Source: Schmidtea polychroa | Lineage: Eukaryota | Length of the DNA: 64,000 bases | Direction: 5' to 3' | NCBI GenBank assembly: GCA_044892525.1 | Contig: CM097887.1 | Span: 49,166,001 to 49,230,000, forward strand | Shown: positions 2,691 to 57,446 of the stretch, piece after piece | Layout of the letters: each line of letters opens with the position of its first letter | Position numbering within the stretch: the stretch's first letter is position 1 | Notes under the pieces: generated by a model | Database searches by the model: none | The model's input: only the letters and a program-made list of their open reading frames with translations | What the model was told of the DNA's origin: nothing | Program-made: the position numbers and the translations under genes

Positions 2691-4025
<1,335 letters not shown>

Positions 4026-11660: not shown

Positions 11661-11668
11661 ATGTTCTG

Positions 11669-26229: not shown

Positions 26230-26915
26230 TTGTTTTCTTTGATATTCTTCACAAATACTCAAGTAACTTCTTTTCGTTTAATTTTCACCAAATTCTTTTC
26301 TCAAATCTTCTCCAATAATAATTCTTCACAATTATTTTCTTTACAATTCTTTTTCACAAATCGTTTCTCCAATAACGTTTCATCCAACGTTGTCTAATTT
26401 TTCCTATAATTTTCTCCCGAATTGTCTCTTAAATTGTCTTTCGAATTGTCTCTCGAATTATCTCCCAAATTGTCTGAATTTGTGGCCACCAGTTTCCCTT
26501 TATGTAGTTATTTTATTTGTGGTACTGGCGACAGATTCTGTTTTCCATTTTCCTTTTCCTCTACGCCAGCCGTATCTCTGACGGATATCAAGATATTTTT
26601 CCATTTTACTTTTTTTCTTAAGCCGCCTTCTCCCGACAATTTCGCTATCTTTGACAAGTTGTCAAGATACGGCTTTTTCCCATTTTTTGTTTTTCTGGAA
26701 TTTGAAATTCCACCTTCATTTGCACTTCTTAATTGATAATGACATTTGTTTTAATTTCTTGTTTGTTTTCTTTTCTTTGATTTATCTTTTTCATTTTTAA
26801 TTTCTTTTTACTTCCATTTTCTTTTCTGAGTTCCCATAGATCGTCCCGTTTGACATGGCAGGTAATTTATGTAATTTATTTATTTATTATGTTATTTTTC
26901 ATTTAGGTATCCTCA
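26230..26915. repeat. Dispersed repeat, diverged copy of 7700-8270
   Basis: Long shared blocks visible by eye (see the 7085-8387 feature). Confidence 0.8.
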
Positions 26916-27113
26916 ATAGATGTTTGACACCAGTTTTTTTTAAATTTATTTATTCATTATAATTTATATATTGTCTAGATTTTTCGATTGTTTTTATTAT
27001 TATTAAACGAAAGACGGAGAGAGCCAGACATTTATGCTAAATAAAAACAACTTACTTATGTGTTAGGGCAATAATTAATTAAATGCATTTGAAAAAAAAT
27101 TAAACTTATTATT

Positions 27114-35427: not shown

Positions 35428-35575
35428 CAGAATTGAGTACCGCCTTATTTTATTAATTTAATTTATTTTTCTTGTTTTTGAGTTATTTTTTCCTATTTTC
35501 TTTATTTTTATTGTGTTTTTTATTTATTTTCTCTAATTTCTTTATTATCTACTACATTTTACGTTATTTTCTGTC

Positions 35576-35758
35576 ATTCTATTGTCCTATTTTAATTGTT
35601 CTTATTTTTATATTTTTTGTTTTAATTCTTATTTTCTAATTTATTATTTTCCTTATATCCTATTCTATTTTATTCTTAAATTTGTTTTTGTTTTATTTTT
35701 ATTTTAATTTAATTATATTTCACCTAATTTCTTGGATACCCTTCGATTCAGCCCAACA
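35576..35758 (-). repeat. Start of the 3' LTR (183-bp block shared with 56434-56616)
   Basis: Identical by eye to 56434-56616. The A-rich composition continues leftward, so the LTR is probably longer. Confidence 0.85.
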
Positions 35759-35998
35759 AATCACTCGGGGACCCATCAAAATTGCGTCCCGCAATTACAT
35801 ACTTACTTCATTCATTCATAAAAAGAAATAAAATAAACACGACATCATATACAATAAATTTATTAATAAGATAAAGGTCAAAATAGAACCAAGCAGGTAT
35901 CACTTATGGTGATAGGATATATACACAGAAGTTCACGCTAGATAATGTTTTACAGTTCACACTAGATAATGTTTTAAATCAGTACTGGCATTGTTTTA

Positions 35999-36625
35999 TT
36001 ACTCTGAGGACTTTGACTGGGGTTGTTGGTACGTTTTAGGCTCGATGTTGTAGTAGGCCGGACGACTGGTTGATGGTTTGGGAGATTCTTGGTTGGTTAA
36101 TCTGAGTGGACTTGTGTTTTGAGTAATGTTGGGGATTTCGACCGAATTTTGCTGGGTGGCTTTGGATTTCGGTTGTTGGCATTTTTTCTTGAATTCGAGG
36201 ATTTCCAGGAAGGTTATTAGACATAATAGGCTTGTTTCGGCGATCACCACATATAGAAGGTAGTGGGTGTCGCTTTGTCCTGAGGACTTCTCGATCTTTT
36301 CAGGTTCGGAATTTTCCTGTCGTATTTGCACTTCTAGTTGATCCAGGTGATGGATTTGTTCTATCATCACTTTATTTATTTTTCTACACAGGAGGTTTCC
36401 TTGGCACATTATTCGGATATTGTCGATGTAGGTTCGGGTTGAACGGATGTTGTCTATGATTTTGCTCTTCACCAAGGTATGGCATATCGGTTTAGGTGAT
36501 TCGGATTGGGTTTTCGAGTTCTTTCTTCGGTGATCTCGGAGGCTATCTATTTGGGGATTACTCTGTGGCTCGCTCATTAGATTGTTGGCCAATATTATCA
36601 AGGTGATTGTCACTCCCCACCGCAT
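35999..36625 (-). CDS. Accessory ORF-E: small type I membrane protein (~208 aa)
   Basis: Signal-like MRWGVTITLIILA, single hydrophobic segment YLLYVVIAETSLLCLITFLEIL, and a Ser/Thr/Pro/Gln-rich tail. Confidence 0.65.
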   Translation of the reverse strand: MRWGVTITLIILANNLMSEPQSNPQIDSLRDHRRKNSKTQSESPKPICHTLVKSKIIDNIRSTRTYIDNIRIMCQGNLLCRKINKVMIEQIHHLDQLEVQIRQENSEPEKIEKSSGQSDTHYLLYVVIAETSLLCLITFLEILEFKKKCQQPKSKATQQNSVEIPNITQNTSPLRLTNQESPKPSTSRPAYYNIEPKTYQQPQSKSSE

Positions 36626-36680
36626 TATACTGTTATACATCAAACATTTAATTTATTTACAATTGTCGACGGTTTTTTGT

Positions 36681-37361
36681 TTAATCGTCTTTCTTTTGGG
36701 GATTGTTTTCGGTGATTCTCATTAGGGTGGTCTCTGCCTTAATGACCCTATATCTCAACTCTGGTAGCATTGCTAACTGTCGGTCCTTTTCTCGGGCCTC
36801 TCTCTTTAAATGTCTAATTTCTTTTTCCAATCGTCTAATCTCTTCCCTTTTCTTTTCCAGGTTTCTTTTTAGCTCAATTTGTAGGAAGTAATTTTGTTGT
36901 TGATGTTTTCCTTCTATCTCTCTATATTTGCGGATCCACTTCTTCATTCCTTCACTTTCTTGTTGACTTTCTTGCAATTGTTTCTCCAGTTCCTCTATGG
37001 TTGCTTGCCGTTCTCGCGCCTCAGTCTTCCAATAATCGTTAATCACTTCGTTTGCCTTTCTACTGGCCCTTTCTTGCCATAATTCTTCCTCAATCTTCTC
37101 CCAATTTCTCCCTCGTTTTCGTTGTTCTTGCAGCCATTCGTTTTCCTCTTCTGTTTCTCTTTTTACTTCCCCTAGCACTCTACATTCTTTCTTTAGTATC
37201 TTTATTATTTTTCGATCTTCTATGTATTTGTTTACCAGTCTCTCGTTTTCACACTTCTCTGCTCGCAACTCTGCTTCTAGCGTTTGTGTTTCAGTTGTTT
37301 CTGTTACAATTTCTCCTTCTTCCACGTCACTCGTGATTTCTATCATTTCTTCGATTTTCAT
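36681..37361 (-). CDS. Accessory ORF-D: coiled-coil protein (~226 aa; frame open from 37415)
   Basis: Intact frame, E/K/R-rich heptads throughout. Confidence 0.65.
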   Translation of the reverse strand: MKIEEMIEITSDVEEGEIVTETTETQTLEAELRAEKCENERLVNKYIEDRKIIKILKKECRVLGEVKRETEEENEWLQEQRKRGRNWEKIEEELWQERASRKANEVINDYWKTEARERQATIEELEKQLQESQQESEGMKKWIRKYREIEGKHQQQNYFLQIELKRNLEKKREEIRRLEKEIRHLKREAREKDRQLAMLPELRYRVIKAETTLMRITENNPQKKDD

Positions 37362-37543
37362 ATCTATAATATGTACAGTTAATGGTGCGCTATAGTGCGA
37401 CTTATACATATACATTTATATAAAATTTAATAGTTTGGGTTACAATCCCTTGAATACTTTTACAATACTTTAATTTTTTTTTGTTTGGGATATACGTCCC
37501 GTTTTTTTTTTTTTTTTTTTTGTTTTTATCTTTTTGTTCGCCG

Positions 37544-38599
37544 TTATACGAAGGTCTCCTCCTGTCCCACATACCCTTCATCACTATCGACCGCTGGATG
37601 CAACTGTATCGCAATAGGGTCATAAGGTAGGTAGTATTGGGGAATTTGAGCTCTCAATTCATTAACTTCGTCTCTTAGGGCTCGAGTGATGTTCAGCTCT
37701 TCGTCGAGCAGGTAGGTGAGATACCTTGTCTCTTCGTCTTTCATCTCTATTTGTCTATCTAGAGCCTTGATTTTCTCGTCGCCCTTCCATTTTTCAATTT
37801 CTATTTCCAAGTTTTTGATATTTTCGGCATACATTTTCCTCTCGTTTTCTAATTTTTTGTTTTTTCCAGCTAGGACCATATTTCTTTGTTCTAGTGATCC
37901 CTGTAATCCATTGAGGTCTCGTTTCATCTCTGCGACCTGATTTACTAATTCCACAACCCGTCCTGCTTGTTGGGTTATCATCTCCTCCATTGCGGCATTC
38001 TCGTGCTCTCTTATGTCGCATTTTATTGCCAAATGTCGCTCGAACTCCATGGCCTTCATCTGCCATGTTTAGCTTCGGGCGGCGACCTTTCTCAACCGTT
38101 TCAGTTCTTCCTTTATTATTAAATTTTCCTCCCATTTACCCTGTTCGTTTTCATATCCGAGTCTCATGGGCAATTCTTTCATCTCTTTTTTCATTTCATT
38201 ATTTTGTCTTTTCCATTTTCTGGCCTCTGCTTATAAATGCATCAATTTCCTTCCTTCTATTTGCTTTTCCGCTTCGCGTTTTGCGTTTTCGTCAGTGAGC
38301 CTCTTTCTCGCTTCCTGCACTAGCTGCTTTAAGTAGTGGCTGTGCGCTTCTTGGCGGGTATTTTCTAATGATGCCCATTTTGATGCCCTTTTACAAGCTT
38401 CTGCTTCCTCTCTTAAATTGTGGATTAGCCATTGATATTTACTGTTCTCATCTTCTCTGGCTTCTTCGATGTAGTTTCGGGTGAGGTTAGTTAGTTGGAA
38501 CATTACTTTGTTCCATTTTTCGTTGTATTCTCGGGGAATTTGTGTTTTGTGGGTATTGGTTGGGGCTATCGTAGTTTCGGTTATTCTCTCTTGTGTCAT
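37544..38599 (-). pseudogene. Accessory ORF-C: ~351-aa coiled-coil protein with two in-frame TAA (38231-38233, 38069-38071)
   Basis: Track ORFs 38231..38599 and 37544..38059 are in the same frame. The segment between them reads AEARKWKRQNNEMKKEMKELPMRLGYENEQGKWEENLIIKEELKRLRKVAARS. Confidence 0.7.
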
Positions 38600-38797
38600 T
38601 TCTAAATCATTGATATAGATTAATCTTTTTATTATGGAGAAAAAAATTTTTTATTCATTAGTTACTGGTTCTTCGGAAATTTTCGCATCATTTTTGGGTT
38701 TTCGTATTTAGGGTTTTTCATACTATTATTATATAATATTTTATTGGTTATATACGCCGATATATACAGGTTATTATATACAACATTATTCGATGGA

Positions 38798-40186
38798 TTA
38801 CTCCGTTCTACCCTTCCCTTCCCTTCTCACTGTCATTTTTATATATATTGTGTCGTTTTTTGTCATCTCTTCCATCTTCTGCTGTAAGATGAACGTGGGT
38901 GCTCCTGATGCTGCTCCTTCCTCATCAGTAGGTCGTCGGTAACACAGCTGGGTTCCCGTTGTTTTGAAGCTTTGTTCGTGGATGCTTTGGTCATTCATCA
39001 TTGTGATATCGATTTTTGCCTGGAATGGCCATTCTATTACCTCGTCATATTCCCCTTTACATAATAGGAAAAATATTGAAAAATGTGTATTCAATCCGGC
39101 TCCATCTCCGTTGGGATATATCCTCATTTTCATCTTGTACCCATTTTTCCAAGAATGGAATGCAGGACTTGTTATTCTTGTCTCTTCCCCAGTTTTGGCT
39201 TTCCGTATTCTTTCTTTCACTCCCGTTATCTTCCATATATAAGGTGCTGTTGGGGTTATCTCATTTAGATTTATTTCCTGTATTTTCCGATGTAGCTCCT
39301 TGGCCTGATTATTACTGATTTCTATACGATTTATTTGCATCTTTATGTTAGCTCGGGCTTCTTCGAACGCTTCTCTTTCTTATAGTAGTTCTTTGACTAA
39401 CGCTTTCAACGATGTTATTTCTATCTCCATTTGTTTTACTTTCTCTTCACTTTCTTGTAACGCAGTCGACCACATTTCTGCGTGGGTTGAAGCATTTTCT
39501 ACTAAATGATGTGGTAATTCTCCTCGGTGTAGTAGTTTCTGACAGCCCCATTTTCCGAGTACACATGTCATTCTTTTCCTTTCGCATTCCTTTAGGTGTT
39601 GGGCTATTTTTATTGTTCTCCCTTCCTCGCATCAGTTCGGGCATTCCCCACTGAACTCCGCGCATACCTTTTCCTCTTGGACATTGTGATGTTTGCTGGT
39701 GAGATTTTTCCACGTATCTATTTCTCCACAATGTTTGCATCTTTCTAGTCTCTCTTCACACTGGCTTTGATGCTCTTTTTCTTCGCTTGCTCGAATGGTT
39801 TTATGGCACCTTTCACACTGGCTGATTCTGTACATACATTCCCCCATATGTTGCACTACTTTCCATATTACTCCCTTCCATTCGCATGGGGTATTTTTAC
39901 ATCCCAGATTGGTGTTTACCATGTCTTTCACTGCGGCTTTATCCTCGTTAGTGTCTTCTAAACTCGATATTAGTGTCTCTTTACACACCGGGCACCACTG
40001 TGGTCTATTCTTTATTGCTTCACTGATACATTCCTTACATAATCTGCATCCACATTGGGTTTGGTGAGGTTCCTTTAACAACTTTTCACATATTCCGCAC
40101 ATAACATGTTTGTGTATTCTGATCGTTGTAGATTTTCGGACTTGTTCGACAATCTCTCTGAACTCTTCTCTTTGTCGTTTATCCAT
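38798..40186 (-). pseudogene. Accessory ORF-B: intronless full-length TRAF (RING, TRAF zinc fingers, coiled coil, MATH), 462 codons, two in-frame stops
   Basis: RING CGICEKLLKEPHQTQCGCRLCKECI...CPVC; zinc fingers CKNTPCEWKG...HMGEC and CPN*C...HLKEC; MATH YIWKI...SPAFHS...GYKMKMRIYPNGDGAG...HFSIFF...GEYDEVIEWPF. The track ORFs starting at 40186, 39571 and 39340 share one frame, broken by TGA 39632-39634 and TAA 39380-39382. Confidence 0.92.
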
Positions 40187-40271
40187 TCTATAATTATATA
40201 TACATATAGTTCTTATCGATACAGGTTCGATATTTTATTTACAATTATTTACATTTTAAGCTAGGTTTGGT

Positions 40272-40631
40272 TTATGGTTCGGAAGAGTCGGCTTCGTGTC
40301 CGCCCTCCTCTCTATTCATTAGCCATTCTGACCAGTCTTCTATTTCTGTCTGTTCTGCTTCCTCCATCATTCTGTCCAATTCGATTTCCTGTCTTCGGCT
40401 ATATTGGGTTATCCTCTCTATTTCTCTTTGCATTTGTTCGATTTTTAACCTCTGGTCTTCAATTATCTTCAAATAACTAAATCCTCTGTTCATACTCTCG
40501 ATTAGGTTCTTTTGCATCGTCAATCCTTGTTCTTGCAAATTAGACACTAATTGTGCTAATACGGCACATTGTTGCTTCCATAATTCTTCGGTTACTGTGT
40601 TGTGGTTCATTTCGTTATTTCCTTGCTCCAT
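40272..40631 (-). CDS. Accessory ORF-A: small acidic coiled-coil protein (~119 aa)
   Basis: Intact frame with heptads LKIEQMQREIERI...IELDRMMEE. Confidence 0.55.
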   Translation of the reverse strand: MEQGNNEMNHNTVTEELWKQQCAVLAQLVSNLQEQGLTMQKNLIESMNRGFSYLKIIEDQRLKIEQMQREIERITQYSRRQEIELDRMMEEAEQTEIEDWSEWLMNREEGGHEADSSEP

Positions 40632-40791
40632 TCTTAATTTATATACACTTTTCAACTCTTATCTAAATTTAATTTTATTTTATGATTCCCGTTATTGTAT
40701 AATATTGATACCGCGCTTATATAACGATATAGTACTGTTATATACATAAGATATACTTACTTTTTACAATTATATACAGTCATATTCCTTT

Positions 40792-43700
40792 CTATATACG
40801 GGGTTTTGGAGGGCGCTGGGCGTTCCAGGCCTCCACCCACTGTTCTTGTTTGACATCACTTGGTCGTTTCACTCGATGTTGGAAATTTCTGATTCGGGTC
40901 ATCTCTAGTTCTCCGCGATGTCGTTTATCTTTAATTATTTTTATTGTTCCCCCCGTTATGATTAGGAATGCCCCTGTTATTATTATCCCACTGATCCACA
41001 TCATCTGCTTTACGCTTATACTCTCTGGTTTTTCCTTGTTTATTAATGTTGATATCGCTTCTGTACTTTTCTCGTTTCCTCTTTTGCCATTTCCTTTCAT
41101 CATCTCTCGTATTCTTGCTATTTCCTCGTTCATACCCTCCTTTGCCATCTTTTGTATTTTTTCCATCTCTTCCTCCGAAACATAGTTGTCCTGAGCTTCC
41201 TCGCCGGTTTTCTTGTGCTTTCCTCCTTCGTCTTTTTCGTCGTTGTTTTTTCTTTTCTTCCCTCTTTTCCCCGGGTATCGTCGACATTCCCTTTTTGATT
41301 CGTTCCTCCAGATACAAACTGTGTATTCCTTTGGGGGCTGCTGCTGCGTCACATATTGATGGCATCTCTCACCTGGTCCTAATCTTGAAATACAGACTTT
41401 GTGTTCTTTTCTTGGTTGAAGTGGCGTTATTACTACTTCACCTCCTTTTCCTAGGTGCACCTCTTTTCCCTTCACGTTCGTTATTCTTTTCCCGTCTCGA
41501 TTTCGGTATGCTTCTTGTATTCTTACCTCTGTTATTGGTTCTGTGTCCTCATTTATCAGTACTAATCTCTGATACGCTCTAGACATACATCTTCCTAGTA
41601 TGCACCTTTCCTTTAGGCCCCATTCTTCCTTTAAGTCCCACTGCTGTTCTTGTGCTTGCTTTTTCTTTTCTTGTTTTAGTTCTTCCTCTTTGCTATCTTG
41701 ATTCTCCGCTTCTTTGGTTTCTTTTATCGTTCTCGTCCCTCCATGAGCTGTTACTAACTCTATCAAGGTTAGCATGATTATCATTAAGATCATATTTGTT
41801 TCCATTTCTTTGTTAGTGAAAGGTAGGCATACCCTCTGTTTTCCATTATTCGGTTTTTCCTCCTCTTTGGTCTTGGTTCCCGGGCTGTTTCCCTCTCTTC
41901 TTGTACCCGAATCCTTGTTTTCCGGTTTATCCTCTTCCGGTTCTCTTTTCCCTTTATCCTCCTTTCGGCCTTTTCCGTCATTGTCATCGTGTTTATCTCC
42001 CCCGCTGTTGTTTAAAATGTCGTCCTCGACATTTATATCGTTCAGTAATCTGCGATATGCTGTTAACACTCTGTTCCTTGCTAACTTTGCTTCGAATTCA
42101 AACTCTTTTCTACCCGTTGCAGCATGTCTCTTTCTATTCCATTCTTTGACTAATTCTCTCAATTGAATACGACGATGTTTTCCAATTCGTTGTTGCTCGT
42201 TTTGATTTTGCGTGAATTTGAGGTCTTCTCTATTTAATACTATTAAGATAATTTTAGGCGTCCCCCCTTTAGTTAGGGTATTCTTTACCATCGCGTTTTC
42301 TCCGTTTTCGTAAAATTCGTTTATATTTATCGCATATTTATTATTTTGTGGTACTCTCCATGTCAATAATAATTTCATTGCTTCTAGATTTTTCCGTACC
42401 GTATTCCACTGAAATTGTGATGTGTTTTTGCATATATTTTCAACTTCCTCTTTTGTCGCATTTTTGCAAATAAATCTGATCATTTCCAAGTTTGGCTGTA
42501 TGGTTGCCCAGTCCAATGTGGAGTTCCCTTCGTTTGATTTTTCGTCTAGTCTCGATCCTGATTGATGTAGGATGTGGAGTGTTTTTGGGTGTATTTTCGT
42601 TATAGCTGCATACATCATGGCGGTTTCGCCTTGTTCATTTTTCGTGTTGGTTTCCTCGCCCATATCTCTAAGGATTCTCATGATCGTTATTGCTCTATTT
42701 TCTTTCGCTGCTAGTATTGCTTGTTGTAGTGGTGTTCTGGAATCCTTCGTTACCATCGTAAATGCTCGGGGCAAGAAGGTTTTAATTTTACCGATGTCCA
42801 AATTCGTTGTTTGATCTCTTGCATATGTATGCACGGTTTTTATTATTTCTGATAATATTATTTCATCTGGTAGCTCTAGCATTTCCTCAAAGAACACTTC
42901 TTTCGCTTTGCATATTATTGCTCTTTGATCTATATTCATTGATTTTGTTTCGATGAAGTTATTTGCGATTTTATGGTTCGTTTGCGCCATTGGTTCTCTT
43001 GATGTCTCATGCCTTATTTTCATTTTCTTTCCGGTTGGATTATTGATTCGTTCCTCTGCGGTAAGTATTTGAATAATATCTAGATAATTCTCGCGGATGT
43101 TGTTCATCGTGTCCATCATGTATAATACACTTACCGTTTCCCAATGTTTATTTCGTACCTGAGTGATGAATTGGAATATTGATTTTTCGAATGTGTCAAT
43201 TCGCTTTTTTAATAACTGCTCATCCTTATGATTTGTGAATGTTATTCCTCGTTCTAGTAATTGATTCGGGATTTCGAATAAATGATGTCCTCTCATAGCT
43301 TCTCTCATCAGTGTGTTTTCTCCTCTCGTGAATGCTTCGTTTACGTTGATCATATAATTATTTTTAATTGGGTTTCTCCAAGTGATTAATACTCCGGTAA
43401 TTGTTGTCAGTTTCTCTTTGATCGCTGTTAATAATCCCTCATACATGTTTCCGACTTCTCGATTGTCCTCGTATGATAGTAGCTCCATCAACGACGTAAA
43501 CGCTTCGGTACTTTTCCCTTCGATAGCATGATGTAGTGCGTTTTTCCGATCGTGGTCTTGTGTAGTTATTTTTGATCCTGTATCAAGTAATGCGGTTATT
43601 ATGTCTTTTGTTTTGCCTCTGTTTGCTGCTATCATTAATGGTGTGTAACCTTGGTTATTTTCTTGTTCTGTTGATCGCTTGCAGTCGTGAAATGCTTCTA

Positions 43701-44960
43701 TTGTTTCTAGTATTTGCTCATTGTTACCTACTTTCATGAGTTTGTGTAATGGTGTGTCTCCATAATGATCTGTTATTGTAAATAATATTGGCCATTGACT
43801 TTTAACTACTCGTAATAACGGATGTGTTCTCTCTCTGTTTGCATAGTTTTCGATCATCGTCAATAATCCTCCTAATATTTCGAAATCTAATCGATCTTTT
43901 GCCCATCCGGGTAATTTTATCTTTACCTCTCGTACGATTTTTTCAGCTTCCGATGGTTGTATGCCCAATCGTCCAGTGGTAGGTTCTGCGAGTTGTTGCA
44001 TCATGTTCATTCTGTAGGTTTGCGAACGTGTGGTTAATGTACGGCCTTCTGGTTGACTGGTGGCTGTTTTTGGAATTGATTTGCATCGTGCCACGTTTAC
44101 GTATATTGGCCTGGTGAATGGATTATTTACCAATTTCACTCTTACATTGGTTTCGCCTACGAACAAGATCTCATATGGCCCTTTTCCGTTCCATTGTAAC
44201 TTTCTTGTGGTTCCGGGAATTAATTCTGGGGTCTCGATCATCACCCAATCGCCTGTTCGAAACGTATGTTGCTTCACGTTTTTCTTTCGATCGTGTAAAT
44301 CTTTATAACTTTCCTGGTAGAACTTGATATTTAATCCCGCAGTTTCCCAAATCTCCTGCATTCTTTCTTTGAATTTCGTAACATAATCATCTATCTCCAT
44401 GTATTGCGATATCGGTGGTTGGTATTCCAGGTCCATTGGCATGTTGCATTCTCTTCCGTACATTAATTTAAATGGGCTCATTTTTGTTGATGCGTGAATC
44501 GACATTCCGTAAGCCATAAGACATAGATTTATGTATTCATCCCAATCTCGTTGGTGGCGATCGACGTAGTTTGATAACATTTGTATGAGTGTTCCATTAA
44601 ATCTTTCCGTCATCCCATTGGTTTGAGGGTGATATGGGGATGTTCTTAGTTTTGCGATTTTGAAATAGTTTGTTACTTCGCTCATTATCTCACTCATGAA
44701 ATTAGTTCCTTGATCAGTTAGTATTTGTTTCGGTGTTCCATAACGGCAACATATCTCTTCTACCAGTATCTTTGCAATTGTTTTGGCTTTTTGGTCTGGC
44801 ATCGCGAATGCTTCTGGGAATTTCGTGAGAAAGTCGGTAATCACTAAAATATAAACATTTCCTTTATCCGATTCTGGTAATGGACCAACTACATCCATTG
44901 ATATCATCGTCATCGGCTCTATTGGTACTGGCATTGGCGTTTCGATCCAGTGTTTTTCCT
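40792..44960 (-). CDS. Polyprotein C-terminal part: integrase core + GPY, two ankyrin clusters, internal signal peptide, small ectodomain, transmembrane anchor
   Basis: ISMDVVGPLP / ILTDQG / GMTERFNG (D-D35-E) and GKGPY. ANK motifs GDTPLH, GYTPLMIAA, RKNALHHA, SRTPLQ and GETAMMYAA. Hydrophobic MILMIIMLTLIELVTA (~41750-41800) and MWISGIIITGAFLIITGG (~40950-41005). Confidence 0.9.
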
Positions 44961-47900
44961 TGTTGCACAGGTTAGGCAGTTTTTCACCCATTCGGTTACG
45001 TCTTCCGTTAGGGTTGGCCAAAAATATTTCTGTTTCATTCTTGCTAACGTCTTTTTTGATGACATATGTCCTCCCAATCTCCCATCGTGATATTGCGTTA
45101 GTAACTCTTTTCGTCGGTTTTCCGGTATACACATTAATCGTTTTTCCCCATCCATTATCAGCAACCAATCTTTCTCCATAATATATCGGTGTCGGTGTTT
45201 ATCCATATGTTCTTTTAATTTTTGATCTTTCGCATATACCTCCGTCTTTCCGGTTTTTACATAATCGATAATTTGTTTTAATTCCGCGTCCTCTTGTTGG
45301 TCCTTTCGCAATTGACAGAAATCTAAATCTTCCGCTACTATTAAGCATATGCGTTGCATTTCTGGATCTACCAAATCTGGAAAAATAAACCTTGACATAC
45401 AGTCGGCGTTTGCATTCGCTCTTCCCGCTTTGAATTTTATGAACGGTGAATACTCTTGTAGCTGCATTGCCCATCTCATTAGTCTACTGGACGCTTCTTT
45501 ATGTTGCCCTAACCACACTAATGGTTGATGATCTGTGGTTATACATATCTCATGTCCCCATAGTAAATATCGGAAGTGTTTGATAGCTTGTATTATAGCC
45601 AATGCTTCTCGTTCTGTTACCGAATAGTTCTTCTCGTGCTTTTTGAATATTCGACTGTAATACCCGATTACTCTCTCTTTTCCTTCATCGTCTAATTGTC
45701 CCAGAATCGCGCCTGCCGCGTACCCGCTTGCATCCGTCGCCAATAGAAATGGCTTCTTGAAATCTGGGTGTACGAGGATAGGTGCTTCGATTAGCTTGTC
45801 TCTCAGCGTTTCAAACGCCTCTTGTTGTTCCTTTCCCCAAATGAACGAAATATCCTTCTTTACTAATTCCTGGATTGGTTTTGCAATTCCTGCATAATTT
45901 TTGATAAATTTGCGATAGTATCCGCATAATCCTAGAAATTCCTGAACTTGGGTGACAGTTTTCGGTGCTGGACATGTTTTTATTTTCTCAATGTTTCTTG
46001 GATCTGGCTCCTTTCCTTTAGCTGACACTATGTGTCCCAAAAACGTGACTTTTTCCTTTGCCCAATCACATTTTGAGGGTTTGAGCTTGAGTTTCCATTG
46101 TCTTAATCGAATAAATACATTTCGGATATCCTCCAGATGTTGTTCGAATGTCGCTGAATAGATTAACAAATCGTCAATATATACCATACATTGTTTGATT
46201 CCATGAGTGACGAAGTTCATACACCTTTGAAATGATGCTGGTGCGTTGGTCAGTCCGAATGGCATTTTTCTGAACTGATATAGATCTCGTCCCAACGTGA
46301 AAGCCGTTTTCTCTTTGTCCTCATCTTTGACTTTGATTTGCCAGTATCCACTTTTTAAATCTAAAGAAGTAAAATATGCTGCCCCTTGCAACATGAGTAA
46401 CATTTCATTGATGTCTGGCAATGGATAGGTATCTCTCTTGGTTACTGCGTTTAATTTTCGATAATCGATACAGAATCGTTGGGTGCCATCTTTCTTTTTT
46501 ACCATGACCACTGGGAATTGCCAAGGTGAGCAACTTGGTTCGATCACTTTTGCGTCTAACATTTTTTGTACTTCTGCTTCGGCTATTTCTTTTTGCATTT
46601 CTGCTAGCTTGTATGGTCTCAATGCAATTCGGGTTTCGTCTATGAGTGGTATTGCATGTAGGGTAACATCGCATGTACCCAAATCTAGGTCCGAGATGGC
46701 GAATATATCTTTATATTCTACTAATAATCGGTGCAATTTTTTCTTTTCATCATTCGTCAACAACATACTATCTATGGTCCATAATTCATCATCTTTGATC
46801 ATCTCGTTGGTCACTTTCGGTAATTCTATGTCCATCATTGGGGTCAATCTTCCCAATTTTTCATTCTCATAGATGATTTTGTCTTCCTCTTCAAAATTTG
46901 TGATGTTGATCGGTATCACTCCTTCTGGGTTTATTGTTATTATTTCTCTGGCGAGGGGTAACTCTCGTCGTTTTTCGAATGATTTGCTTGGTTCAAAGAT
47001 AACTTCTCCTTCCATCCCCGTATCCACCTTTATCTGACAAATCATCTGTGATTTTGCTGGTACCACAATTTTCTCTGGACATCTGATTATGGCATTCATT
47101 TTGCATATTCTGCCTGTTCTGTCTTTTAGGCACATGGTTGTTAAGTCAATTACCACTTCTTTTAATAATTCTGGCATCAAATCCGTTCCGATTATGCATG
47201 GTACGCTAAGTTTTGGTATTACTGCCAAATACGTTTCAATTTCGTTGTCCTGGTATCTCAATGTAGTCCACCATCTTCCGACCACATCTACTGTTTCTTT
47301 ACTACATGCTATGATATGAATGGTTGTTGATTCGATATCCTTCCAGTACTTACTGGGAATCTGATTGATTGCTATCGCTGATACGTTAGCTCCGGTGTCT
47401 ATCATAGCATTGGTTTCCTTACCATTGATTTGAATCATAACTGTGACTGCTGGACCTCCAGGTGAATTCATTGCTGCTATTGTTCTTACGTCATCTGCTT
47501 GATCTACACTTTTGGTACGTCGCGTTGGCATATAAAGCATCCCGGGTTGACTTGGTAATTGCGGATACATATTCTGTGTCATGGTCAAAGCGGCTTGTGG
47601 TCCCACGATATCCGGTGGTATATAGCTTCCGTTGGCGATCCAGGTGTTTGTCTTTTCCTTTTCCCAATACGGTGCTGTTTCCATCGGTTTTTCGTTTGGG
47701 TTTCTGTTTGGATATAGACATTTATCGTTCCCGTTATCGTCGTCGTCACTATCGCTGTTTGATGATTGACTTCTGAATCGGTCCAAAAATTTTGGTTTAT
47801 TCTTTTTCAATTGTCGTCTTGTTGCTTCGTCGTACATTACCTTCCGGAATCGTCTGCCTACTTCTTCGTCGGTTCCTTTAATCTTTGTTAATATTTTAAT

Positions 47901-50024
47901 TAATCGTTTTATTCGATGAATGTCTTTTGAGTGACCATGTAATACCATGGTTTTAGCTAAAAATGGTAGAAAGCCTACTATCATTTTCCAGTTAACTTTC
48001 TTTTCCCGCTTGTATATATCAAAACAAGCTAACATTTGTGTTAGTATTACTCTGACGATCTGAATTATGAGTATGATCCCCAATATTCCGGCCATCATTT
48101 GTCCGAAAACTAAGAATCTTCCCCACATTGCTTTCATCATATTTGAGGTTGCTTGTTGGAAATGGTCTGGCGATAATAGCAGTTCGTAATTCGGGCCTGA
48201 TTGATAATTTGTTCCCCCAGTTATTGTAACCATATTTGACAAAATGGATTCTCGTCTGGCTGGGAAGAGTACGTTAAGTCGTGATGTTTCTAGATCTTCT
48301 GGGGAATACATACCACCGTTTGACACGTCTATAGGTTTGAAATCCAGCTCTGTGGCGAGTTCTATTAATCCAAATTTCTTGGGCTCCTCGGATATGGTTT
48401 TTCCCGGTAACATCATCCATTTCCCATCGGGTCTTTCATACAATGGTCCGTACGCATTAGAACAGTTAAAGAGATTTGGATAGAAACCCACTGGATTCAT
48501 AATTCTAGTGACTGGTTGGACGAATCGATTTTGTCCTTTATAACGGATTTCTAATTCATTTGCACATCTCTTTTCGGGTAGTATGGATTTTTCGGGCATT
48601 CGTGCATACGTCTTGGTACACTGGTAGGTGTACATCACTTCTCCTACCATTCTACCAAAATGTCCGTCTGGTAATGGGAGTGATGGCATCGTGTTATCTG
48701 GGTGCGTTATCGCAATAGCTAGCTTTGTTTTCAGTATTTCTTTATTCAATGAACAATCGTTTTGTATGAGATCGTAATATACTTTCTGTAGGGTCGTTTG
48801 TCCACGATGAAATAAAAAATCCATTTTATTATTTGCATATAAGTATAGTTTTACGTCCTCCGTTGCTATCTTTCCCACTGCTCTATCGATTATTTGTCTT
48901 GACATATAGATACCAGCGTAATTGGTTTTATATACTATACTGTCGCATTTGGTGGTTTCTTTCTCTTTGATAAATCTCATACCTAGATCTGGATCGTCGG
49001 TAATTAATGCTGTTGGTGTTTTCTGCGTCGAGAGTCTTTTTTCTCTGGGAGATGGTGGCATTGGTTTTCCATTTCGCATTCTCACTCTTTCGTTTCCATC
49101 TTCGTCGTTTTCGTTCTCATAAATTTCTCCCTTTACTTCATTGAACAAAGCACTTTTTAACAGTTGGAGTCGGCATTTTTGCGTGTTAGCTTCATAGATT
49201 ATAGTTGATACTCCTGTCCTGCATACGTTTTCTGTAGCTCTACATGCTGGGTTGGTCTTCATTTGATAATTATTTGCGTCAAATTGTGCTTCGTATTCTT
49301 TTAATTCGACCGTATAAGACTCGATCACTACTACTCCCGATATTACCTCGCCTCGGATCGTATACGTACCTCCGTTACATGACCCATCTGATGACTTTAC
49401 TTTTCCGGATACGTAAACACTTTCGGTTTTAATCATTCCAGTTTGTCCGTGTATCGTCACTCCGTTATGCATTTTTAGAGCTCCGGTTCTAAATAGCTCT
49501 TTACAGTCTTCTCTTTGTATTTGTACGATTTCTTTATCTAGACCGGGTAGTATGAGGGTTGAATACGAATATTGTCCGCAATAATACGCGAGTACCTTTT
49601 TTGATACAACGCATTCTCTTGCTTGCGTTCTGATGAAATCTGATTCTTGATATACATGGTAGGTAACTTTTGTTTTTACTATGTCCAATCTGTTGGGTGA
49701 TGCTTGCCTGCATTCTTCTATATCTCTCAATGAGTATTTATCTCTCATTATCATATTATCACAATCGTAGATGGTAAAACCCGTTGCTCCACTTGTGCAC
49801 AACATCCATATCATCATAGTCATCATTAACGAATTTATCGATGCTTTTCGGCTTGCTGGGTCTTTCATGGGTAGTTCCCATTCTAGTTCATTTAACAGCT
49901 TTTTCAATCTAACTTGCATCGACCTTTCTTGCTCATTTTTTCGTGGCGCTTGTATAAGTCTTTTCCATCCTCCGGCACTGATAATATGGGGTTCAATAGT
50001 GTCTTCTATGATTGACACGGTCAT
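44919..50024 (-). CDS. Polyprotein: envelope glycoprotein (48020-49840) fused in frame to protease, RT, RNase H and the integrase zinc finger
   Basis: A single 1701-aa open frame. Signal-like LMMTMMIWMLCTSGATG, Cys-rich ectodomain and TM FLVFGQMMAGILGIILIIQIV, then MIDTGA (47399-47391), YIDD (46181-46170), ATDASG and H-x6-H...C-x2-C. A -1 shift near 44955 leads into the integrase core. Confidence 0.93.
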   Translation of the reverse strand: MTVSIIEDTIEPHIISAGGWKRLIQAPRKNEQERSMQVRLKKLLNELEWELPMKDPASRKASINSLMMTMMIWMLCTSGATGFTIYDCDNMIMRDKYSLRDIEECRQASPNRLDIVKTKVTYHVYQESDFIRTQARECVVSKKVLAYYCGQYSYSTLILPGLDKEIVQIQREDCKELFRTGALKMHNGVTIHGQTGMIKTESVYVSGKVKSSDGSCNGGTYTIRGEVISGVVVIESYTVELKEYEAQFDANNYQMKTNPACRATENVCRTGVSTIIYEANTQKCRLQLLKSALFNEVKGEIYENENDEDGNERVRMRNGKPMPPSPREKRLSTQKTPTALITDDPDLGMRFIKEKETTKCDSIVYKTNYAGIYMSRQIIDRAVGKIATEDVKLYLYANNKMDFLFHRGQTTLQKVYYDLIQNDCSLNKEILKTKLAIAITHPDNTMPSLPLPDGHFGRMVGEVMYTYQCTKTYARMPEKSILPEKRCANELEIRYKGQNRFVQPVTRIMNPVGFYPNLFNCSNAYGPLYERPDGKWMMLPGKTISEEPKKFGLIELATELDFKPIDVSNGGMYSPEDLETSRLNVLFPARRESILSNMVTITGGTNYQSGPNYELLLSPDHFQQATSNMMKAMWGRFLVFGQMMAGILGIILIIQIVRVILTQMLACFDIYKREKKVNWKMIVGFLPFLAKTMVLHGHSKDIHRIKRLIKILTKIKGTDEEVGRRFRKVMYDEATRRQLKKNKPKFLDRFRSQSSNSDSDDDDNGNDKCLYPNRNPNEKPMETAPYWEKEKTNTWIANGSYIPPDIVGPQAALTMTQNMYPQLPSQPGMLYMPTRRTKSVDQADDVRTIAAMNSPGGPAVTVMIQINGKETNAMIDTGANVSAIAINQIPSKYWKDIESTTIHIIACSKETVDVVGRWWTTLRYQDNEIETYLAVIPKLSVPCIIGTDLMPELLKEVVIDLTTMCLKDRTGRICKMNAIIRCPEKIVVPAKSQMICQIKVDTGMEGEVIFEPSKSFEKRRELPLAREIITINPEGVIPINITNFEEEDKIIYENEKLGRLTPMMDIELPKVTNEMIKDDELWTIDSMLLTNDEKKKLHRLLVEYKDIFAISDLDLGTCDVTLHAIPLIDETRIALRPYKLAEMQKEIAEAEVQKMLDAKVIEPSCSPWQFPVVMVKKKDGTQRFCIDYRKLNAVTKRDTYPLPDINEMLLMLQGAAYFTSLDLKSGYWQIKVKDEDKEKTAFTLGRDLYQFRKMPFGLTNAPASFQRCMNFVTHGIKQCMVYIDDLLIYSATFEQHLEDIRNVFIRLRQWKLKLKPSKCDWAKEKVTFLGHIVSAKGKEPDPRNIEKIKTCPAPKTVTQVQEFLGLCGYYRKFIKNYAGIAKPIQELVKKDISFIWGKEQQEAFETLRDKLIEAPILVHPDFKKPFLLATDASGYAAGAILGQLDDEGKERVIGYYSRIFKKHEKNYSVTEREALAIIQAIKHFRYLLWGHEICITTDHQPLVWLGQHKEASSRLMRWAMQLQEYSPFIKFKAGRANANADCMSRFIFPDLVDPEMQRICLIVAEDLDFCQLRKDQQEDAELKQIIDYVKTGKTEVYAKDQKLKEHMDKHRHRYIMEKDWLLIMDGEKRLMCIPENRRKELLTQYHDGRLGGHMSSKKTLARMKQKYFWPTLTEDVTEWVKNCLTCATRKNTGSKRQCQYQ

Positions 50025-54940: not shown

Positions 54941-55982
54941 CTACGCTTCCTTGTAATTAGCGGCTACCGACTTGGGTGGATTGGTTTCTGGTGAAGTTTC
55001 CTTCGTAAATTATTCGGTATGAGTCTGCTACTGCGATTCTGAGGAGATTTACTAGTCCTTGACAGATGGCTGCTAATACTATGAGGCTGAATATATCGGT
55101 GATTTGTTCGAAGTTGGAGATGTCGCTCTCTGTATCTTCTTCCGTTCTGGAGTCTTCCGGTTGCTGGGTTTCTTGGTGCGGGTTCTGAATGGATTTATTC
55201 TTGGTCGATTGTTGATTTCTTCGAATTTCTTTTGTGCAGGTTCTGGGTTGGCTTGATTGGCTGGCTTGATTTGATATCTAAAATGAAAAAATGATCTCGT
55301 GTTTCATCTGCTTACACGACTTCATCATTCTTTCTGCAACATTCAAACACAGACACCTTTTAGGTTTCTGTTTGTGTTTCCCCCATCTTTTGTGAAATCC
55401 TTTCCGCGGGTTATAATTTCCCATCAGCCCGTATTTTTCGTCGATTTTAAATTATCTATATGCGGTAGTAACAATTATCTATAGAGTCGTAATAATTATC
55501 TATTCGCTATCAATTATAATATAAATAGGTCGTTGTCGGTCTCTACTTATTACCCCCCTTCGTTTTCCTAATCCCTTTGCGCCATGTCGCTATTTTACTT
55601 TTCGTATTTACTATTATTCCACTCGGTTCTACTCTGGAACCAATAAAATATATTTTCCCGCTTCACCCAAAAAAATTATTCCGTAGAGTTTCTCTATTTC
55701 ACTGGGATCCCTTTAATTAGTTAGTTACTTTCCTCTTCTACTCGTTATCATCATTTCACCTATTCTTTATTTTCCATTATCTTTTAATTCATTTCCTTCT
55801 TCCCCTTCCTTTTCCATTATAATCTTATTATCTTTTCCACGAGCTCGTTTATTTCCTCTCTAAACTCAAATTTTCGTAATTACATTCAATTTGTTTCTAG
55901 CTAGCTTTAGTATTCCATTTCACTATTAATCTAAATATTATCTCATTGTAGCTTAACTGCTATCTATCGCTTTTCTAGGCCT

Positions 55983-56278
55983 TTACGACTGGCTGGCACT
56001 ATTCAACAGCTCAATCTTCTTCCTTCTGATCGGTTGGACTATTCGACAACTCGATCTTACGACTGGCTGGCACTATTCAACAGCTCAATCTTCCTCCTTC
56101 TGATCGGTTGGACTATTCAACAACTCGATCTTACGACTGGCTGGCACTATTCAACAGCTCAATCTTCCTCCTTCTGATCGGTTGGACTATTCAACAACTC
56201 GATCTTACGACTGGCTGGCACTATTCAACAGCTCAATCTTCCTCCTTCTGATCGGTTGGACTATTCAACAACTCGATC
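55983..56278. repeat. Four near-identical 74-bp tandem repeats in the 5' leader of the giant element
   Basis: Units start at 55983, 56057, 56131 and 56205. Each is a dimer of ~37-bp half units (ggcactattcaacagctcaatctt / ggactattcaacaactcgatctt). Confidence 0.95.
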
Positions 56279-56433
56279 TTAATATTCCCCACTCTGCATG
56301 CTGCTACTTCTCTTTTCCTCTTTTACCCCGAATTATCATTTTCTCTGTCTCTACTTTTAATTTGTCGACTTGATCTTTACCGCTTGAGAGTGTTTCCCCT
56401 TTCCCCCCTTGCTCAAAACGCACGACGATCGCG

Positions 56434-56616
56434 ATTCTATTGTCCTATTTTAATTGTTCTTATTTTTATATTTTTTGTTTTAATTCTTATTTTCTAATTT
56501 ATTATTTTCCTTATATCCTATTCTATTTTATTCTTAAATTTGTTTTTGTTTTATTTTTATTTTAATTTAATTATATTTCACCTAATTTCTTGGATACCCT
56601 TCGATTCAGCCCAACA
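56434..56616 (-). repeat. Start of the 5' LTR (183-bp block)
   Basis: Identical to 35576-35758. The sequence switches abruptly to unrelated GC-richer DNA at 56433. Confidence 0.85.
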
Positions 56617-57446
56617 ATACTAATATATTTGGGTCAGAATCATGTTTTGCCCAACAATAGCTAAGCTGCAAATTAACATTATCATACCAATTGTTATTAT
56701 AAATATATAAATTATGTCAGTACATTGCATGATTTTTCGCGGGTTAAGTCTAATTATCATATATTTAATAAATATATTATGCTCTCCCCCATTTCTGTAC
56801 TCGAGTTCTAGATTGCTGTGGACTCAATTCCTATTCATATCTCATTTTATAAATATTAAATCATAACAAACTCTTTCATTTTAATTTGGTTTTAAGAAAT
56901 AATGACATTTAATGTCCATCGCAACAATTTGATCATTGTGGGGTAATGACTGTCACGCTATTTCAGTTTGAATGGCTACCATGATGTTGCCGAGTTGCTA
57001 GCCTTATATTCATGAAAGGGATGAAATCTGGATATGGAGCGAAAATTTTAGAAAAATTGTTGTTAGATTATCAGATTCAAATTTGTTATTTTGAGACTGT
57101 TTCCCATCGTTTCAGCCACCTTTAACCACCTTGTTAATTAGATAAGTTGATGTGTTTGATTAATTGTGAATTTAATAATATAAATTTTGTTTTATAATTT
57201 TAGAACAAAAAAACACCGATATCTTTACTGATTCATAGTCACAAATTTCTAATAAATACAATGTCAATTGAAAATAAGCCACAGGTGAAAATTGAAAAAA
57301 GTTCTTATAATATATATAGTGCAAATCCCAATAGTAGGTTTACGGATGTACTTGTAAACAGTTTCTGTGTATGATGGTGTCTCCAGGGGCGAATATGATT
57401 TTTCATACGCCATGTTTACAAGTTTACAAATTTTCTGTGACCAAGC

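What the first reader, a model, noticed from the sequence alone, without database searches (positions are those of the whole stretch)
38798..40186. A retroelement carrying its own full-length TRAF gene
Seen: an intronless RING-ZF-coiled coil-MATH frame of 462 codons inside the element, broken only by two nonsense codons. Established: TRAFs are TNFR/TLR signalling adaptors and E3 ligases acting in NF-kB/JNK pathways, and the family is expanded in planarians. Inference: a captured host gene used to modulate innate-immune or death signalling. Together with the ankyrin (IkB-like) and Ubl modules it may form an NF-kB/ubiquitin-interference kit. If such elements are numerous, part of a host TRAF expansion could be transposon-borne.
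Basis: partly seen in the sequence, partly recalled or inferred. Interest (0 to 1): 0.87.

Follow-up and report, generated by a model that had tools for sequence, protein, structure and literature searches.

The report
TRAF pseudogene inside a giant flatworm retroelement
A 21-kb virus-like retrotransposon in a flatworm genome carries a complete but recently broken copy of a TRAF signalling-adaptor gene; this cargo is already described for the planarian "Burro" elements, so this is a new arrangement of a known thing.

Summary
Window 38798-40186 (minus strand) is a 462-codon frame with two internal nonsense codons and no frameshift. It is colinear with full-length cellular TRAFs: RING, five TRAF zinc fingers, coiled coil, MATH.

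It lies inside a 21.0-kb LTR element (35576-56617, identical 184-nt LTRs). The element's order is gag, zinc knuckles, weak Ubl, env-like glycoprotein, PR-RT-RH-IN, ankyrin repeats, then six small 3' ORFs. The TRAF is the second of these.

- **Not a retrocopy:** no poly(A) tail or target-site duplication surrounds it.
- **Part of the element:** its base composition and intergenic motifs match the rest of the element.
- **Recently inactivated:** all 25 conserved zinc-ligand columns are kept and the MATH fold is intact.

The concept is published. Planarian Burro/GYPSM1 giant gypsy-like elements were reported to carry RING, MATH_TRAF_C, Ubl, ankyrin and an in-frame env (PMC6431247). What differs here is a stand-alone TRAF ORF downstream of integrase, a smaller element and short LTRs.

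Interference with TNFR/NF-kB or death signalling is plausible by analogy but untested. "IkB-like" ankyrins are not supported. No other copy could be retrieved, so selection across copies and a transposon-borne share of the host TRAF expansion remain open.

The parts
56434..56617 (-). 5' LTR (184 nt, A-rich)
   Evidence: It is 100% identical to 35576-35759. No target-site duplication was seen at the outer edges, and the termini are not the canonical TG...CA.
55909..56352 (-). 74-nt tandem repeat array in the 5' leader
   Evidence: Family D3, five copies. Tandem repeats are also drawn in published Burro elements (figure legend in PMC6431247).
40792..54730 (-). gag-to-integrase-ankyrin coding region, given as one part. 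Domain bounds: capsid 54185-54469; CCHC knuckles 53769-53873; weak Ubl-like 51018-51164; env-like fusion glycoprotein 48009-49832; protease 47166-47441; RT 46026-46502; RNase H 45450-45839; integrase 44626-45128; ankyrin blocks 43444-43776 and 42361-42789.
   Evidence: Pfam matches: Retrotrans_gag 1e-11, zf-CCHC 4.7e-8, Monjiviricetes_fusion 4.5e-70, RVP 1.9e-10, RVT_1 6e-36, RT_RNaseH 1.7e-38, Integrase_H2C2 5.9e-21, rve 4.8e-13, Ank_2 1.1e-17. If read as one polyprotein, as in published Burro elements, it is interrupted four times: two changes of frame and two in-frame stops (counts). Some of these may be native ORF boundaries.
40272..40631 (-). Accessory ORF 1 (about 119 aa from its ATG; coiled-coil-like, no family match)
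   Evidence: Its ATG context resembles that of the TRAF ORF (family D1).
38798..40186 (-). TRAF gene (the finding): 462 codons, broken by two nonsense codons, no frameshift. Domain bounds: RING 39983-40099; TRAF zinc-finger region about 39509-39901; coiled coil about 39266-39493; MATH/TRAF-C 38822-39241.
38231..38599 (-). Accessory ORF 3 (122 aa, no family match)
37544..38059 (-). Accessory ORF 4 (171 aa, coiled-coil-like)
   Evidence: only sub-threshold coiled-coil family matches.
36681..37415 (-). Accessory ORF 5 (244 aa, coiled-coil-like)
35999..36643 (-). Accessory ORF 6 (up to 214 aa, start uncertain, with a hydrophobic segment)
35576..35759 (-). 3' LTR (184 nt)

Best explanation
The frame is an accessory gene of a Burro-like giant Ty3/gypsy (endogenous-retrovirus-like) LTR element of a flatworm. 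It is a complete TRAF: RING E3 module, five TRAF zinc fingers, trimerising coiled coil and a receptor-binding MATH domain. The element lineage took it from a host TRAF long ago and has carried it since as its own 3' ORF.

**Shown**
- The domain architecture.
- Its position inside the LTR pair, on the coding strand.
- The absence of retrocopy hallmarks.
- A composition and flanking motifs shared with the rest of the element.
- Retention of the zinc ligands and the MATH core.
- Two nonsense codons in this copy.

**Inferred**
- In intact copies the protein probably acts as a virus-encoded TRAF. It would either dock on TNFR/TLR-pathway partners through its MATH crevice and ubiquitinate or sequester them, or poison host TRAF trimers through its coiled coil. 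The effect would be to bias NF-kB/JNK or death signalling in cells that express the element.
- It is probably translated from a spliced or otherwise processed subgenomic RNA, as are the accessory genes of complex retroviruses.
- In this copy the gene is a young pseudogene. Given the identical LTRs, at least one of the two stops was probably already present in the source copy, so the TRAF may not be needed in cis for transposition.
For: **Architecture and integrity**
- Domain matches and fold.
- All 25 columns in which at least 80% of 15 full-length TRAFs have Cys or His are kept.
- 27 of 32 MATH columns that are at least 90% conserved in 68 cellular TRAFs are kept.

**Inside the element**
- Identical 184-nt LTRs lie 20.9 kb apart.
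- GC of about 0.39 and a strong strand-specific A excess run continuously from about 36 to 56 kb, against GC of about 0.30 in the flanks.
- TRAF composition (A 0.41, GC3 0.39, A3 0.45) matches gag-pol.
- There is no poly(A), no target-site duplication and no flanking repeat.
- TGTANATA octamers cluster on the sense strand in the spacers on both sides of the TRAF and of the other 3' ORFs, and are absent from the sense strand of gag-pol.
- The TRAF and the ORF before it share an ATG context.

**Lineage**
- An env-like glycoprotein in frame between gag and protease, CCHC knuckles, ankyrin repeats and a weak Rad60-SLD signal match the description of planarian Burro/GYPSM1. That family is reported to carry RING (AIR1), Smc and MATH_TRAF_C, and in D. 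tigrina the MATH_TRAF_C lies in a separate accessory ORF (PMC6431247).
- The host is a flatworm, and the nearest named TRAFs are from triclads.

**Precedent for a viral TRAF**
- The best matches in the viral fold library are iridovirus/megalocytivirus TRAF homologues.
- ISKNV ORF111L binds TRADD and induces caspase-8-dependent apoptosis (PMC3352826).

**Timing of the stops**
With 0 differences in 184 nt of LTR, the chance of two new stops arising in the TRAF since insertion is at most about 0.15, and lower for younger insertions.
Against: - Only one copy could be examined, so retention and selection across copies were not measured.
- This copy cannot make a full-length protein.
- No RNA evidence shows how, or whether, the ORF is expressed.
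- The MATH domain is more divergent than usual: it keeps 84% of the highly conserved columns, against a median of 98.5% for cellular TRAFs. This could reflect relaxed constraint as well as adaptation.
- The element differs from published Burro elements: 21 kb rather than more than 30 kb, 184-nt LTRs, and no BIR or Bcl-2 match. Its identity to Burro1-4 could not be checked.
- More distant relatives with the same env-in-pol layout have no TRAF (L001, L004, L005).
- No target-site duplication was found for the element itself.
Confidence: 0.7

Rival explanations
1. Secondary retrocopy. A processed host TRAF mRNA was reverse-transcribed into this one element copy, so the TRAF is not part of the family.
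For: The frame is intronless. A single A20 run lies 1.3 kb downstream, at 37502-37521. More distant relatives of the element have no TRAF.
Against: - There is no poly(A) tract after the TRAF stop, and no target-site duplication of 8 nt or more for either the ORF or the block ending at the A20 run.
- Composition is identical to gag-pol.
- The same TGTANATA spacer motifs lie inside and outside the candidate block.
- The ATG context is shared with the neighbouring ORF.
- The best identity to any protein in a 1.84-billion-representative library is only 46% in MATH, so the capture cannot be recent.
- The literature reports TRAF modules in this lineage.
Confidence: 0.07
2. Passenger without function. 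The TRAF is integral to the family but is neutral or decaying cargo that does nothing for the element, even where it is uninterrupted.
For: - There are two nonsense codons in a copy whose LTRs are identical.
- Stops are denser in the TRAF than in gag-pol if only stops are counted (P 0.042).
- At least one stop was probably inherited from the source copy.
- The MATH domain is more divergent than cellular TRAFs.
Against: - There is no frameshift or indel over 462 codons.
- All 25 zinc-ligand columns are intact.
- The MATH model has high confidence.
- With all interruptions counted, the density is not significantly different from gag-pol (P 0.093).
- TRAF modules persist in elements of two planarian genera in different positions. 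This is hard to reconcile with long neutral drift.
Confidence: 0.18
3. The frame is a host TRAF gene that merely lies between fragments of unrelated elements, or the region is an assembly chimera.
For: No target-site duplication was found for the element, and its LTR termini are non-canonical. Flatworm-like contigs elsewhere carry intronless TRAF-like genes with no element genes nearby (L002, L003).
Against: - The coding strand, compact spacing, GC and A-skew are continuous from the 5' LTR through the TRAF to the 3' LTR.
- There are no N runs inside the element.
- Spacer motifs are shared with the other ORFs.
- The LTR pair is perfect.
Confidence: 0.03

Closest known systems
[quoted passage not shown] 2018; reviewed in PMC6431247)
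   Same: Ty3/gypsy backbone. Gag with CCHC knuckles. An env-like fusion glycoprotein in frame between gag and protease. Ankyrin repeats and a Ubl/SUMO-like motif. A RING plus coiled-coil (Smc) plus MATH_TRAF_C module. Tandem repeats. A flatworm host.
   Different: In Burro1 the TRAF-like module is embedded in the giant ORF1 polyprotein upstream of env. Here it is a stand-alone ORF downstream of integrase-ankyrin, and nothing TRAF-like lies upstream of env. The element is 21 kb with 184-nt LTRs, against more than 30 kb. BIR, Bcl-2-like and dUTPase motifs were not detected. Sequence identity to Burro1-4 could not be measured, because no sequences were available to the tools.
Burro-like element of Dugesia (Girardia) tigrina described in PMC6431247
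   Same: The MATH_TRAF_C domain is encoded by a separate accessory ORF rather than within the polyprotein.
   Different: There the accessory ORF is upstream of ORF1; here it is in the 3' accessory region. That description mentions only the MATH_TRAF_C domain; here the full RING-ZF-CC-MATH architecture is shown.
Viral TRAF homologues of fish megalocytiviruses (ISKNV ORF111L and relatives)
   Same: A TRAF-domain protein encoded by a virus or virus-like genome. These are the best fold matches in the viral library, with E 1e-16 to 6e-14. They are a functional precedent: ORF111L binds TRADD and drives caspase-8-dependent apoptosis (PMC3352826).
   Different: They belong to a large dsDNA virus of vertebrates, not a retroelement, and represent an independent capture. 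Identity is only 22-30%. No function was tested here, and this copy is broken.
Cellular TRAF2/TRAF3/TRAF5-type adaptors, including triclad TRAFs (D. japonica TRAF-2-like A, Dendrocoelum lacteum TRAF-4)
   Same: The same domain order and length. The three pieces are colinear with a 469-aa TRAF. The TRAF-C is closest to TRAF1/2/3/5 and the RING-ZF to TRAF6/5/2. The named nearest relatives are from triclads.
   Different: It is encoded inside a mobile element. Identity is 35% over the full length and at most 46% in MATH. It is interrupted by two stops.

Membership tests
TRAF family (TNF receptor-associated factors) | N-terminal RING finger | tested here: met
   zf-C3HC4 E 3.8e-5, covering the full profile. 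TRAF6, TRAF5 and TRAF2 RING-ZnF chains, E 1e-14 to 2.5e-10. All 18 conserved Cys/His columns of the first piece are kept.
TRAF family (TNF receptor-associated factors) | TRAF-type zinc fingers after the RING | tested here: met
   PDB matches extend through the zinc fingers of TRAF6 and TRAF5. zf-TRAF_2 is weak, E 0.0031. 7 of 7 conserved Cys/His columns of the middle piece are kept. The pieces are colinear with 469-aa P0154.
TRAF family (TNF receptor-associated factors) | Coiled-coil TRAF-N | tested here: met
   The model has one continuous helix over residues 2-38 of the last piece, at high pLDDT. The alignment to TRAF2 constructs includes their coiled coil. Trimerisation itself was not tested.
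TRAF family (TNF receptor-associated factors) | C-terminal TRAF-C / MATH beta sandwich | tested here: met
   TRAF-mep_MATH 1.9e-27. TRAF1/2/3 at E about 1e-28. Foldseek TM about 0.75 to TRAF2/3/1. 27 of 32 highly conserved columns are kept.
TRAF family (TNF receptor-associated factors) | Uninterrupted reading frame able to give the full protein | tested here: not met
   Two internal nonsense codons. In this copy it is a TRAF pseudogene.
TRAF family (TNF receptor-associated factors) | Binding of receptor or adaptor peptides, and E3 ligase activity | not testable with these tools
   The only evidence is conserved residues in the alignments to TRAF1 and TRAF3. My reading of which residues form the peptide crevice rests on memory of the TRAF2 structures.
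Burro / GYPSM1-like giant planarian Ty3/gypsy elements | Ty3/gypsy gene order PR-RT-RH-IN, with Gag and CCHC knuckles | tested here: met
Burro / GYPSM1-like giant planarian Ty3/gypsy elements | Env-like fusion glycoprotein located between gag and protease in the same frame as pol | tested here: met
   Monjiviricetes_fusion 4.5e-70, covering profile positions 3-579 upstream of RVP in the same ORF. This is the feature singled out as unique to Burro in PMC6431247. Smaller relatives L001, L004 and L005 also have it.
Burro / GYPSM1-like giant planarian Ty3/gypsy elements | Host-like accessory modules (RING/MATH-TRAF, Ubl, ankyrin, BIR, Bcl-2-like) | tested here: inconclusive
   TRAF and ankyrin are clear. 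Ubl is only sub-threshold. BIR, Bcl-2-like and dUTPase were not detected.
Burro / GYPSM1-like giant planarian Ty3/gypsy elements | Total size above 30 kb with long LTRs | tested here: not met
   21,042 nt from LTR edge to LTR edge, with LTRs of 184 nt.
Burro / GYPSM1-like giant planarian Ty3/gypsy elements | Sequence similarity to Burro1-4 / GYPSM1 reference sequences | not testable with these tools
   No Burro sequence is held by any tool. The nearest pol in the 5.8-billion-protein set is 56% identical over the integrase only.
Burro / GYPSM1-like giant planarian Ty3/gypsy elements | Host is a dugesiid planarian | tested here: inconclusive
   A flanking PSMC4 exon is closest (93%) to flatworm orthologues. 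The flanks are AT-rich. The nearest named TRAFs are from triclads. The species was not identified.
Processed retrocopy of a host mRNA | 3' poly(A) tract and flanking target-site duplication | tested here: not met

The most novel reading that the evidence does not exclude
The TRAF module is a mobile cassette within the Burro-like lineage. It occurs embedded in the polyprotein, as an upstream ORF, and here as a downstream ORF. Copies of such elements could account for a substantial share of the 121-282 MATH/TRAF transcripts counted as a planarian 'TRAF expansion' (PMC6109357, PMC7586133). Part of that expansion would then be retroelement cargo, some of it possibly co-opted, rather than host gene duplication.
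Probability: 0.3. Interest if true: 0.6.

Novelty: new member of a known kind. Interest (0 to 1): 0.35.

Why it matters
It adds a clean, fully resolved example of a complete TRAF (RING to MATH) carried as a separate gene by an endogenous-retrovirus-like element of a flatworm. Compared with published Burro elements, it shows that the TRAF module occupies different positions in related elements.

It also raises a concrete question that can be answered by counting. Studies of planarian immunity, wound response and regeneration treat the large MATH/TRAF transcript family as host genes. If many of these are element-borne, then expression changes ascribed to TRAF signalling may partly report transposon activity. 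Burro1, for example, is highly expressed in intestine when PIWI is depleted (PMC8532177).

As a discovery of principle it is not new.

Tried and rejected
**Looking for other copies of the element or of its TRAF. All searches came back empty.**
- A protein word search with the integrase-ankyrin ORF gave at best 56% identity, over the integrase only.
- An exhaustive representative search with the MATH piece gave at best 46% identity.
- Degenerate-pattern scans of metagenome and viral contigs found nothing.
- An exact look-up of the first TRAF piece found nothing.

**Other negative results**
- There is no second TRAF in the window or in relatives L001, L004 and L005.
- No divergent TRAF-like stretch lies upstream of env, where Burro1 has one.
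- Of 80 TRAF-bearing metagenome loci (410 kb), none has retroelement genes nearby, so the linkage is not generic.
- The retrocopy reading was rejected.
- The IkB-like reading of the ankyrins was rejected as unsupported.
- A shared longer gene-start motif was searched for with mismatches, but the two instances differ by indels and the pattern search was uninformative.
- A splice-donor-like octamer (GTAAGTAT) occurs twice in the 3' region but is not significantly enriched, so the splicing model stays an inference.
- The Grohme et al. 2018 paper is not held, and the supplements of PMC6109357 hold no MATH lists.
- I did not build a tree. The library is clustered at 50% identity, mostly unnamed and lacks the host's own TRAFs, so it could not identify a donor gene.

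Full report
**Observation.** On the minus strand, window 38798-40186 is a 1389-nt frame of 462 codons plus a terminal stop. It has two internal stop codons and no shift of frame.

- The first piece matches RING zf-C3HC4 in Pfam. In the PDB it matches the RING-plus-zinc-finger regions of TRAF6, TRAF5 and TRAF2, with E from 1e-14 to 2.5e-10.
- The middle piece gives a weak TRAF zinc-finger match.
- The last piece matches TRAF-mep_MATH at 1.9e-27 and the TRAF domains of TRAF1, 2, 3 and 5 at about 1e-28.

The three pieces align consecutively along a 469-aa cellular TRAF (P0154) at about 35% identity. The gene is therefore full length and intronless, and is damaged only by the two nonsense codons.

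Several measures show that the domains are intact.
- All 25 columns in which at least 80% of 15 full-length TRAFs carry Cys or His are kept.
- Of 32 MATH-region columns that are at least 90% conserved among 68 cellular TRAFs, 27 are kept. The median cellular TRAF keeps 98.5%.
- An AlphaFold2 model of the C-terminal piece has mean pLDDT 94.2 and shows a 37-residue helix followed by a beta sandwich.
- The best PDB fold matches for that model are TRAF3, TRAF2 and TRAF1.

**Context.** Two perfect 184-nt direct repeats, at 35576-35759 and 56434-56617, bound a 21.0-kb unit. The only N runs in the window lie outside it.

Between the repeats everything is on the minus strand. The unit has GC of about 0.39 and a strong A excess, against about 0.30 GC in the flanks. 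The order of features is:
- a leader with a 74-nt tandem array;
- Gag capsid and CCHC knuckles;
- about 870 residues with no family match;
- a sub-threshold ubiquitin-like signal (Rad60-SLD E 0.039);
- a full-length Monjiviricetes-type fusion glycoprotein (E 4.5e-70);
- protease, RT, RNase H and integrase;
- two ankyrin blocks and a long C-terminal tail;
- six small ORFs, of which the TRAF is the second.

Read as one polyprotein, as in published Burro elements, the gag-to-ankyrin region carries two changes of frame and two in-frame stops. Some of these may be native boundaries (counts).

**Is the TRAF part of the element?** The evidence says yes.
- There is no poly(A) tract after its stop. No target-site duplication or flanking repeat surrounds it, nor the block ending at the single A20 run further downstream.
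- Its base and third-position composition equals that of gag-pol.
- TGTANATA octamers (TGTATATA, TGTAAATA) are over-represented in the window: 28 observed against 15.9 expected, and no shuffle reached 28. Eleven of them lie on the sense strand of the 5-kb 3' region, ten of those in the spacers, including both sides of the TRAF. None lies on the sense strand of the 15.6-kb gag-pol part.
- The TRAF ATG and the ATG of the preceding ORF share a similar context that ends in AG just before the start codon.

These points argue that the gene is wired into the element's own layout.

**Timing of the damage.** With no difference in 184 nt of LTR, the per-copy divergence since insertion is at most about 0.8% (95% bound). 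At that bound the chance of two new stops in the TRAF is about 0.15, and it is below 0.05 at 0.4% divergence. At least one stop was therefore probably inherited from the source copy. That would mean a TRAF-defective element could still be copied.

The density of interruptions in the TRAF is not clearly higher than in gag-pol. The test gives P 0.093 with all interruptions counted and P 0.042 with stops only. The intact zinc ligands and the absence of indels mean the inactivation is recent on the scale of the gene's history.

**Relatives.** No close copy of the element or of its TRAF exists in any collection the tools reach.
- The nearest pol relatives, at no more than 46% identity in RT, share the env-in-pol layout but have no TRAF or ankyrin in the DNA held (L001, L004, L005).
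- The nearest TRAFs are 37-46% identical in MATH. The named ones include Dugesia japonica TRAF-2-like A and Dendrocoelum lacteum TRAF-4, alongside molluscan, nemertean, cnidarian and vertebrate TRAF2/3-like proteins.
- A flanking proteasome ATPase exon is closest (93%) to flatworm orthologues.
- Of 80 TRAF-bearing metagenome loci, none has retroelement genes nearby.

**What is known.** Arkhipova and Yushenova (PMC6431247) summarise Jurka (2007) and Grohme et al. (2018).
- The giant gypsy-like Burro/GYPSM1 elements of Schmidtea mediterranea carry AIR1 (RING), Smc, MATH_TRAF_C, BIR, ankyrin, Bcl-2-like and Ubi2/SUMO-like motifs.
- They carry an env homologue in frame between gag and pol.
- In a Burro-like element of D. 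tigrina, the MATH_TRAF_C domain is encoded by a separate upstream accessory ORF.
- The authors already suggest that the elements meddle with apoptosis and ubiquitination.

The present element shares the diagnostic env-in-pol layout, the knuckles, the ankyrins, the weak Ubl and the tandem repeats. It differs in four ways:
- its size (21 kb against more than 30 kb);
- its short LTRs;
- the absence of detectable BIR and Bcl-2 motifs;
- the TRAF being a complete stand-alone gene downstream of integrase, with nothing TRAF-like upstream of env.

I therefore file it as a new member or arrangement of a known kind, not as a new principle.

**Mechanism (inferred).** By analogy with cellular TRAF2/3/5 and with the viral TRAF of ISKNV, an intact element TRAF would trimerise through its coiled coil and bind receptor or adaptor tails through MATH. 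ISKNV ORF111L binds TRADD and triggers caspase-8-dependent apoptosis (PMC3352826), and iridovirus TRAFs are the best viral fold matches. The element TRAF would then either ubiquitinate its targets through the RING or titrate host partners. Which direction it pushes, pro-survival or pro-death, cannot be told from sequence.

The ankyrin block gives only generic matches and no IkB, so an "NF-kB kit" is not supported beyond the TRAF itself.

**Open idea.** Planarian studies count 121-282 MATH/TRAF transcripts, many of them partial (PMC6109357; PMC7586133), and do not mention transposons. Burro elements are present in thousands of copies and are expressed (PMC8532177). A transposon-borne share of that expansion is therefore plausible and easy to count, but I could not test it.

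Noticed in passing
window 35918-40778, minus strand: TGTANATA octamers are packed into the spacers between the element's 3' accessory ORFs: 10 in about 1.1 kb of spacer. They resemble Pumilio/PUF response elements, or UGUA plus AAUAAA poly(A) signals. None lies on the sense strand of gag-pol. They may be gene-end or gene-start signals, or regulatory signals.
   Followed up: partly
window 40166-40203 and 40611-40648: The TRAF ATG and the ATG of the preceding small ORF share a similar upstream context: a TGTATATA-containing, AT-rich stretch ending in AG just before ATGG. This could be a splice acceptor or a start signal.
   Followed up: partly
window 37502-37521: This is the only long A run (20 nt) inside the element, in the spacer after the fourth accessory ORF. 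No target-site duplication is associated with it, and its origin is unexplained.
   Followed up: partly
window 56380-56640 and 35560-35830: The LTRs lack canonical TG...CA ends and no target-site duplication is visible. A purine-rich tract lies just inside the 5' LTR, where a primer-binding site is expected. A partial copy of the LTR start lies about 30 nt upstream of the 5' LTR.
   Followed up: partly
window 40795-42360, minus strand: The integrase-ankyrin ORF continues for about 500 residues after the second ankyrin block. This tail has lysine/glutamate-rich stretches and at least two hydrophobic, membrane-span-like segments, and matches no family.
   Followed up: no
window 8388-12950, minus strand: A second, compact Ty3/gypsy element of about 4.6 kb has 236-nt LTRs that are 99% identical. 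It has gag with a CCHC knuckle, protease-RT, and RNase H-integrase ORFs, and no accessory genes.
   Followed up: partly
window 2970-4025 (+), 5702-6391 (-), 16592-17176 (+), 57836-58399 (+): Likely host exons or genes: proteasome ATPase PSMC4/Rpt3 (93% to flatworm orthologues), a WD40 protein, and an RTP1-domain protein. There is also a BED zinc-finger ORF next to the element.
   Followed up: partly
L006:10001-11659: A 552-aa protein with a TRAF-type MATH domain, 46% identical to the window's MATH, sits in a 515-kb contig among plainly bacterial genes (ribosomal proteins L13/S9, the cytochrome bc1 operon, SspB). It looks like a bacterial TRAF-like protein.
   Followed up: no
L002:2826-3989 and 10001-11353; L003:2916-4268: AT-rich (GC 0.30) metagenome contigs from one JGI sample carry intronless 387-450-aa coiled-coil-MATH genes, two of them on one contig. 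No retroelement genes lie within 10 kb.
   Followed up: partly
window 17154-17713; 7848-8266 versus 26498-26916; 29307-29503: Other repeats in the window: a 48-nt tandem array, a dispersed 420-nt repeat (88% identical), and a 197-nt palindromic repeat.
   Followed up: no
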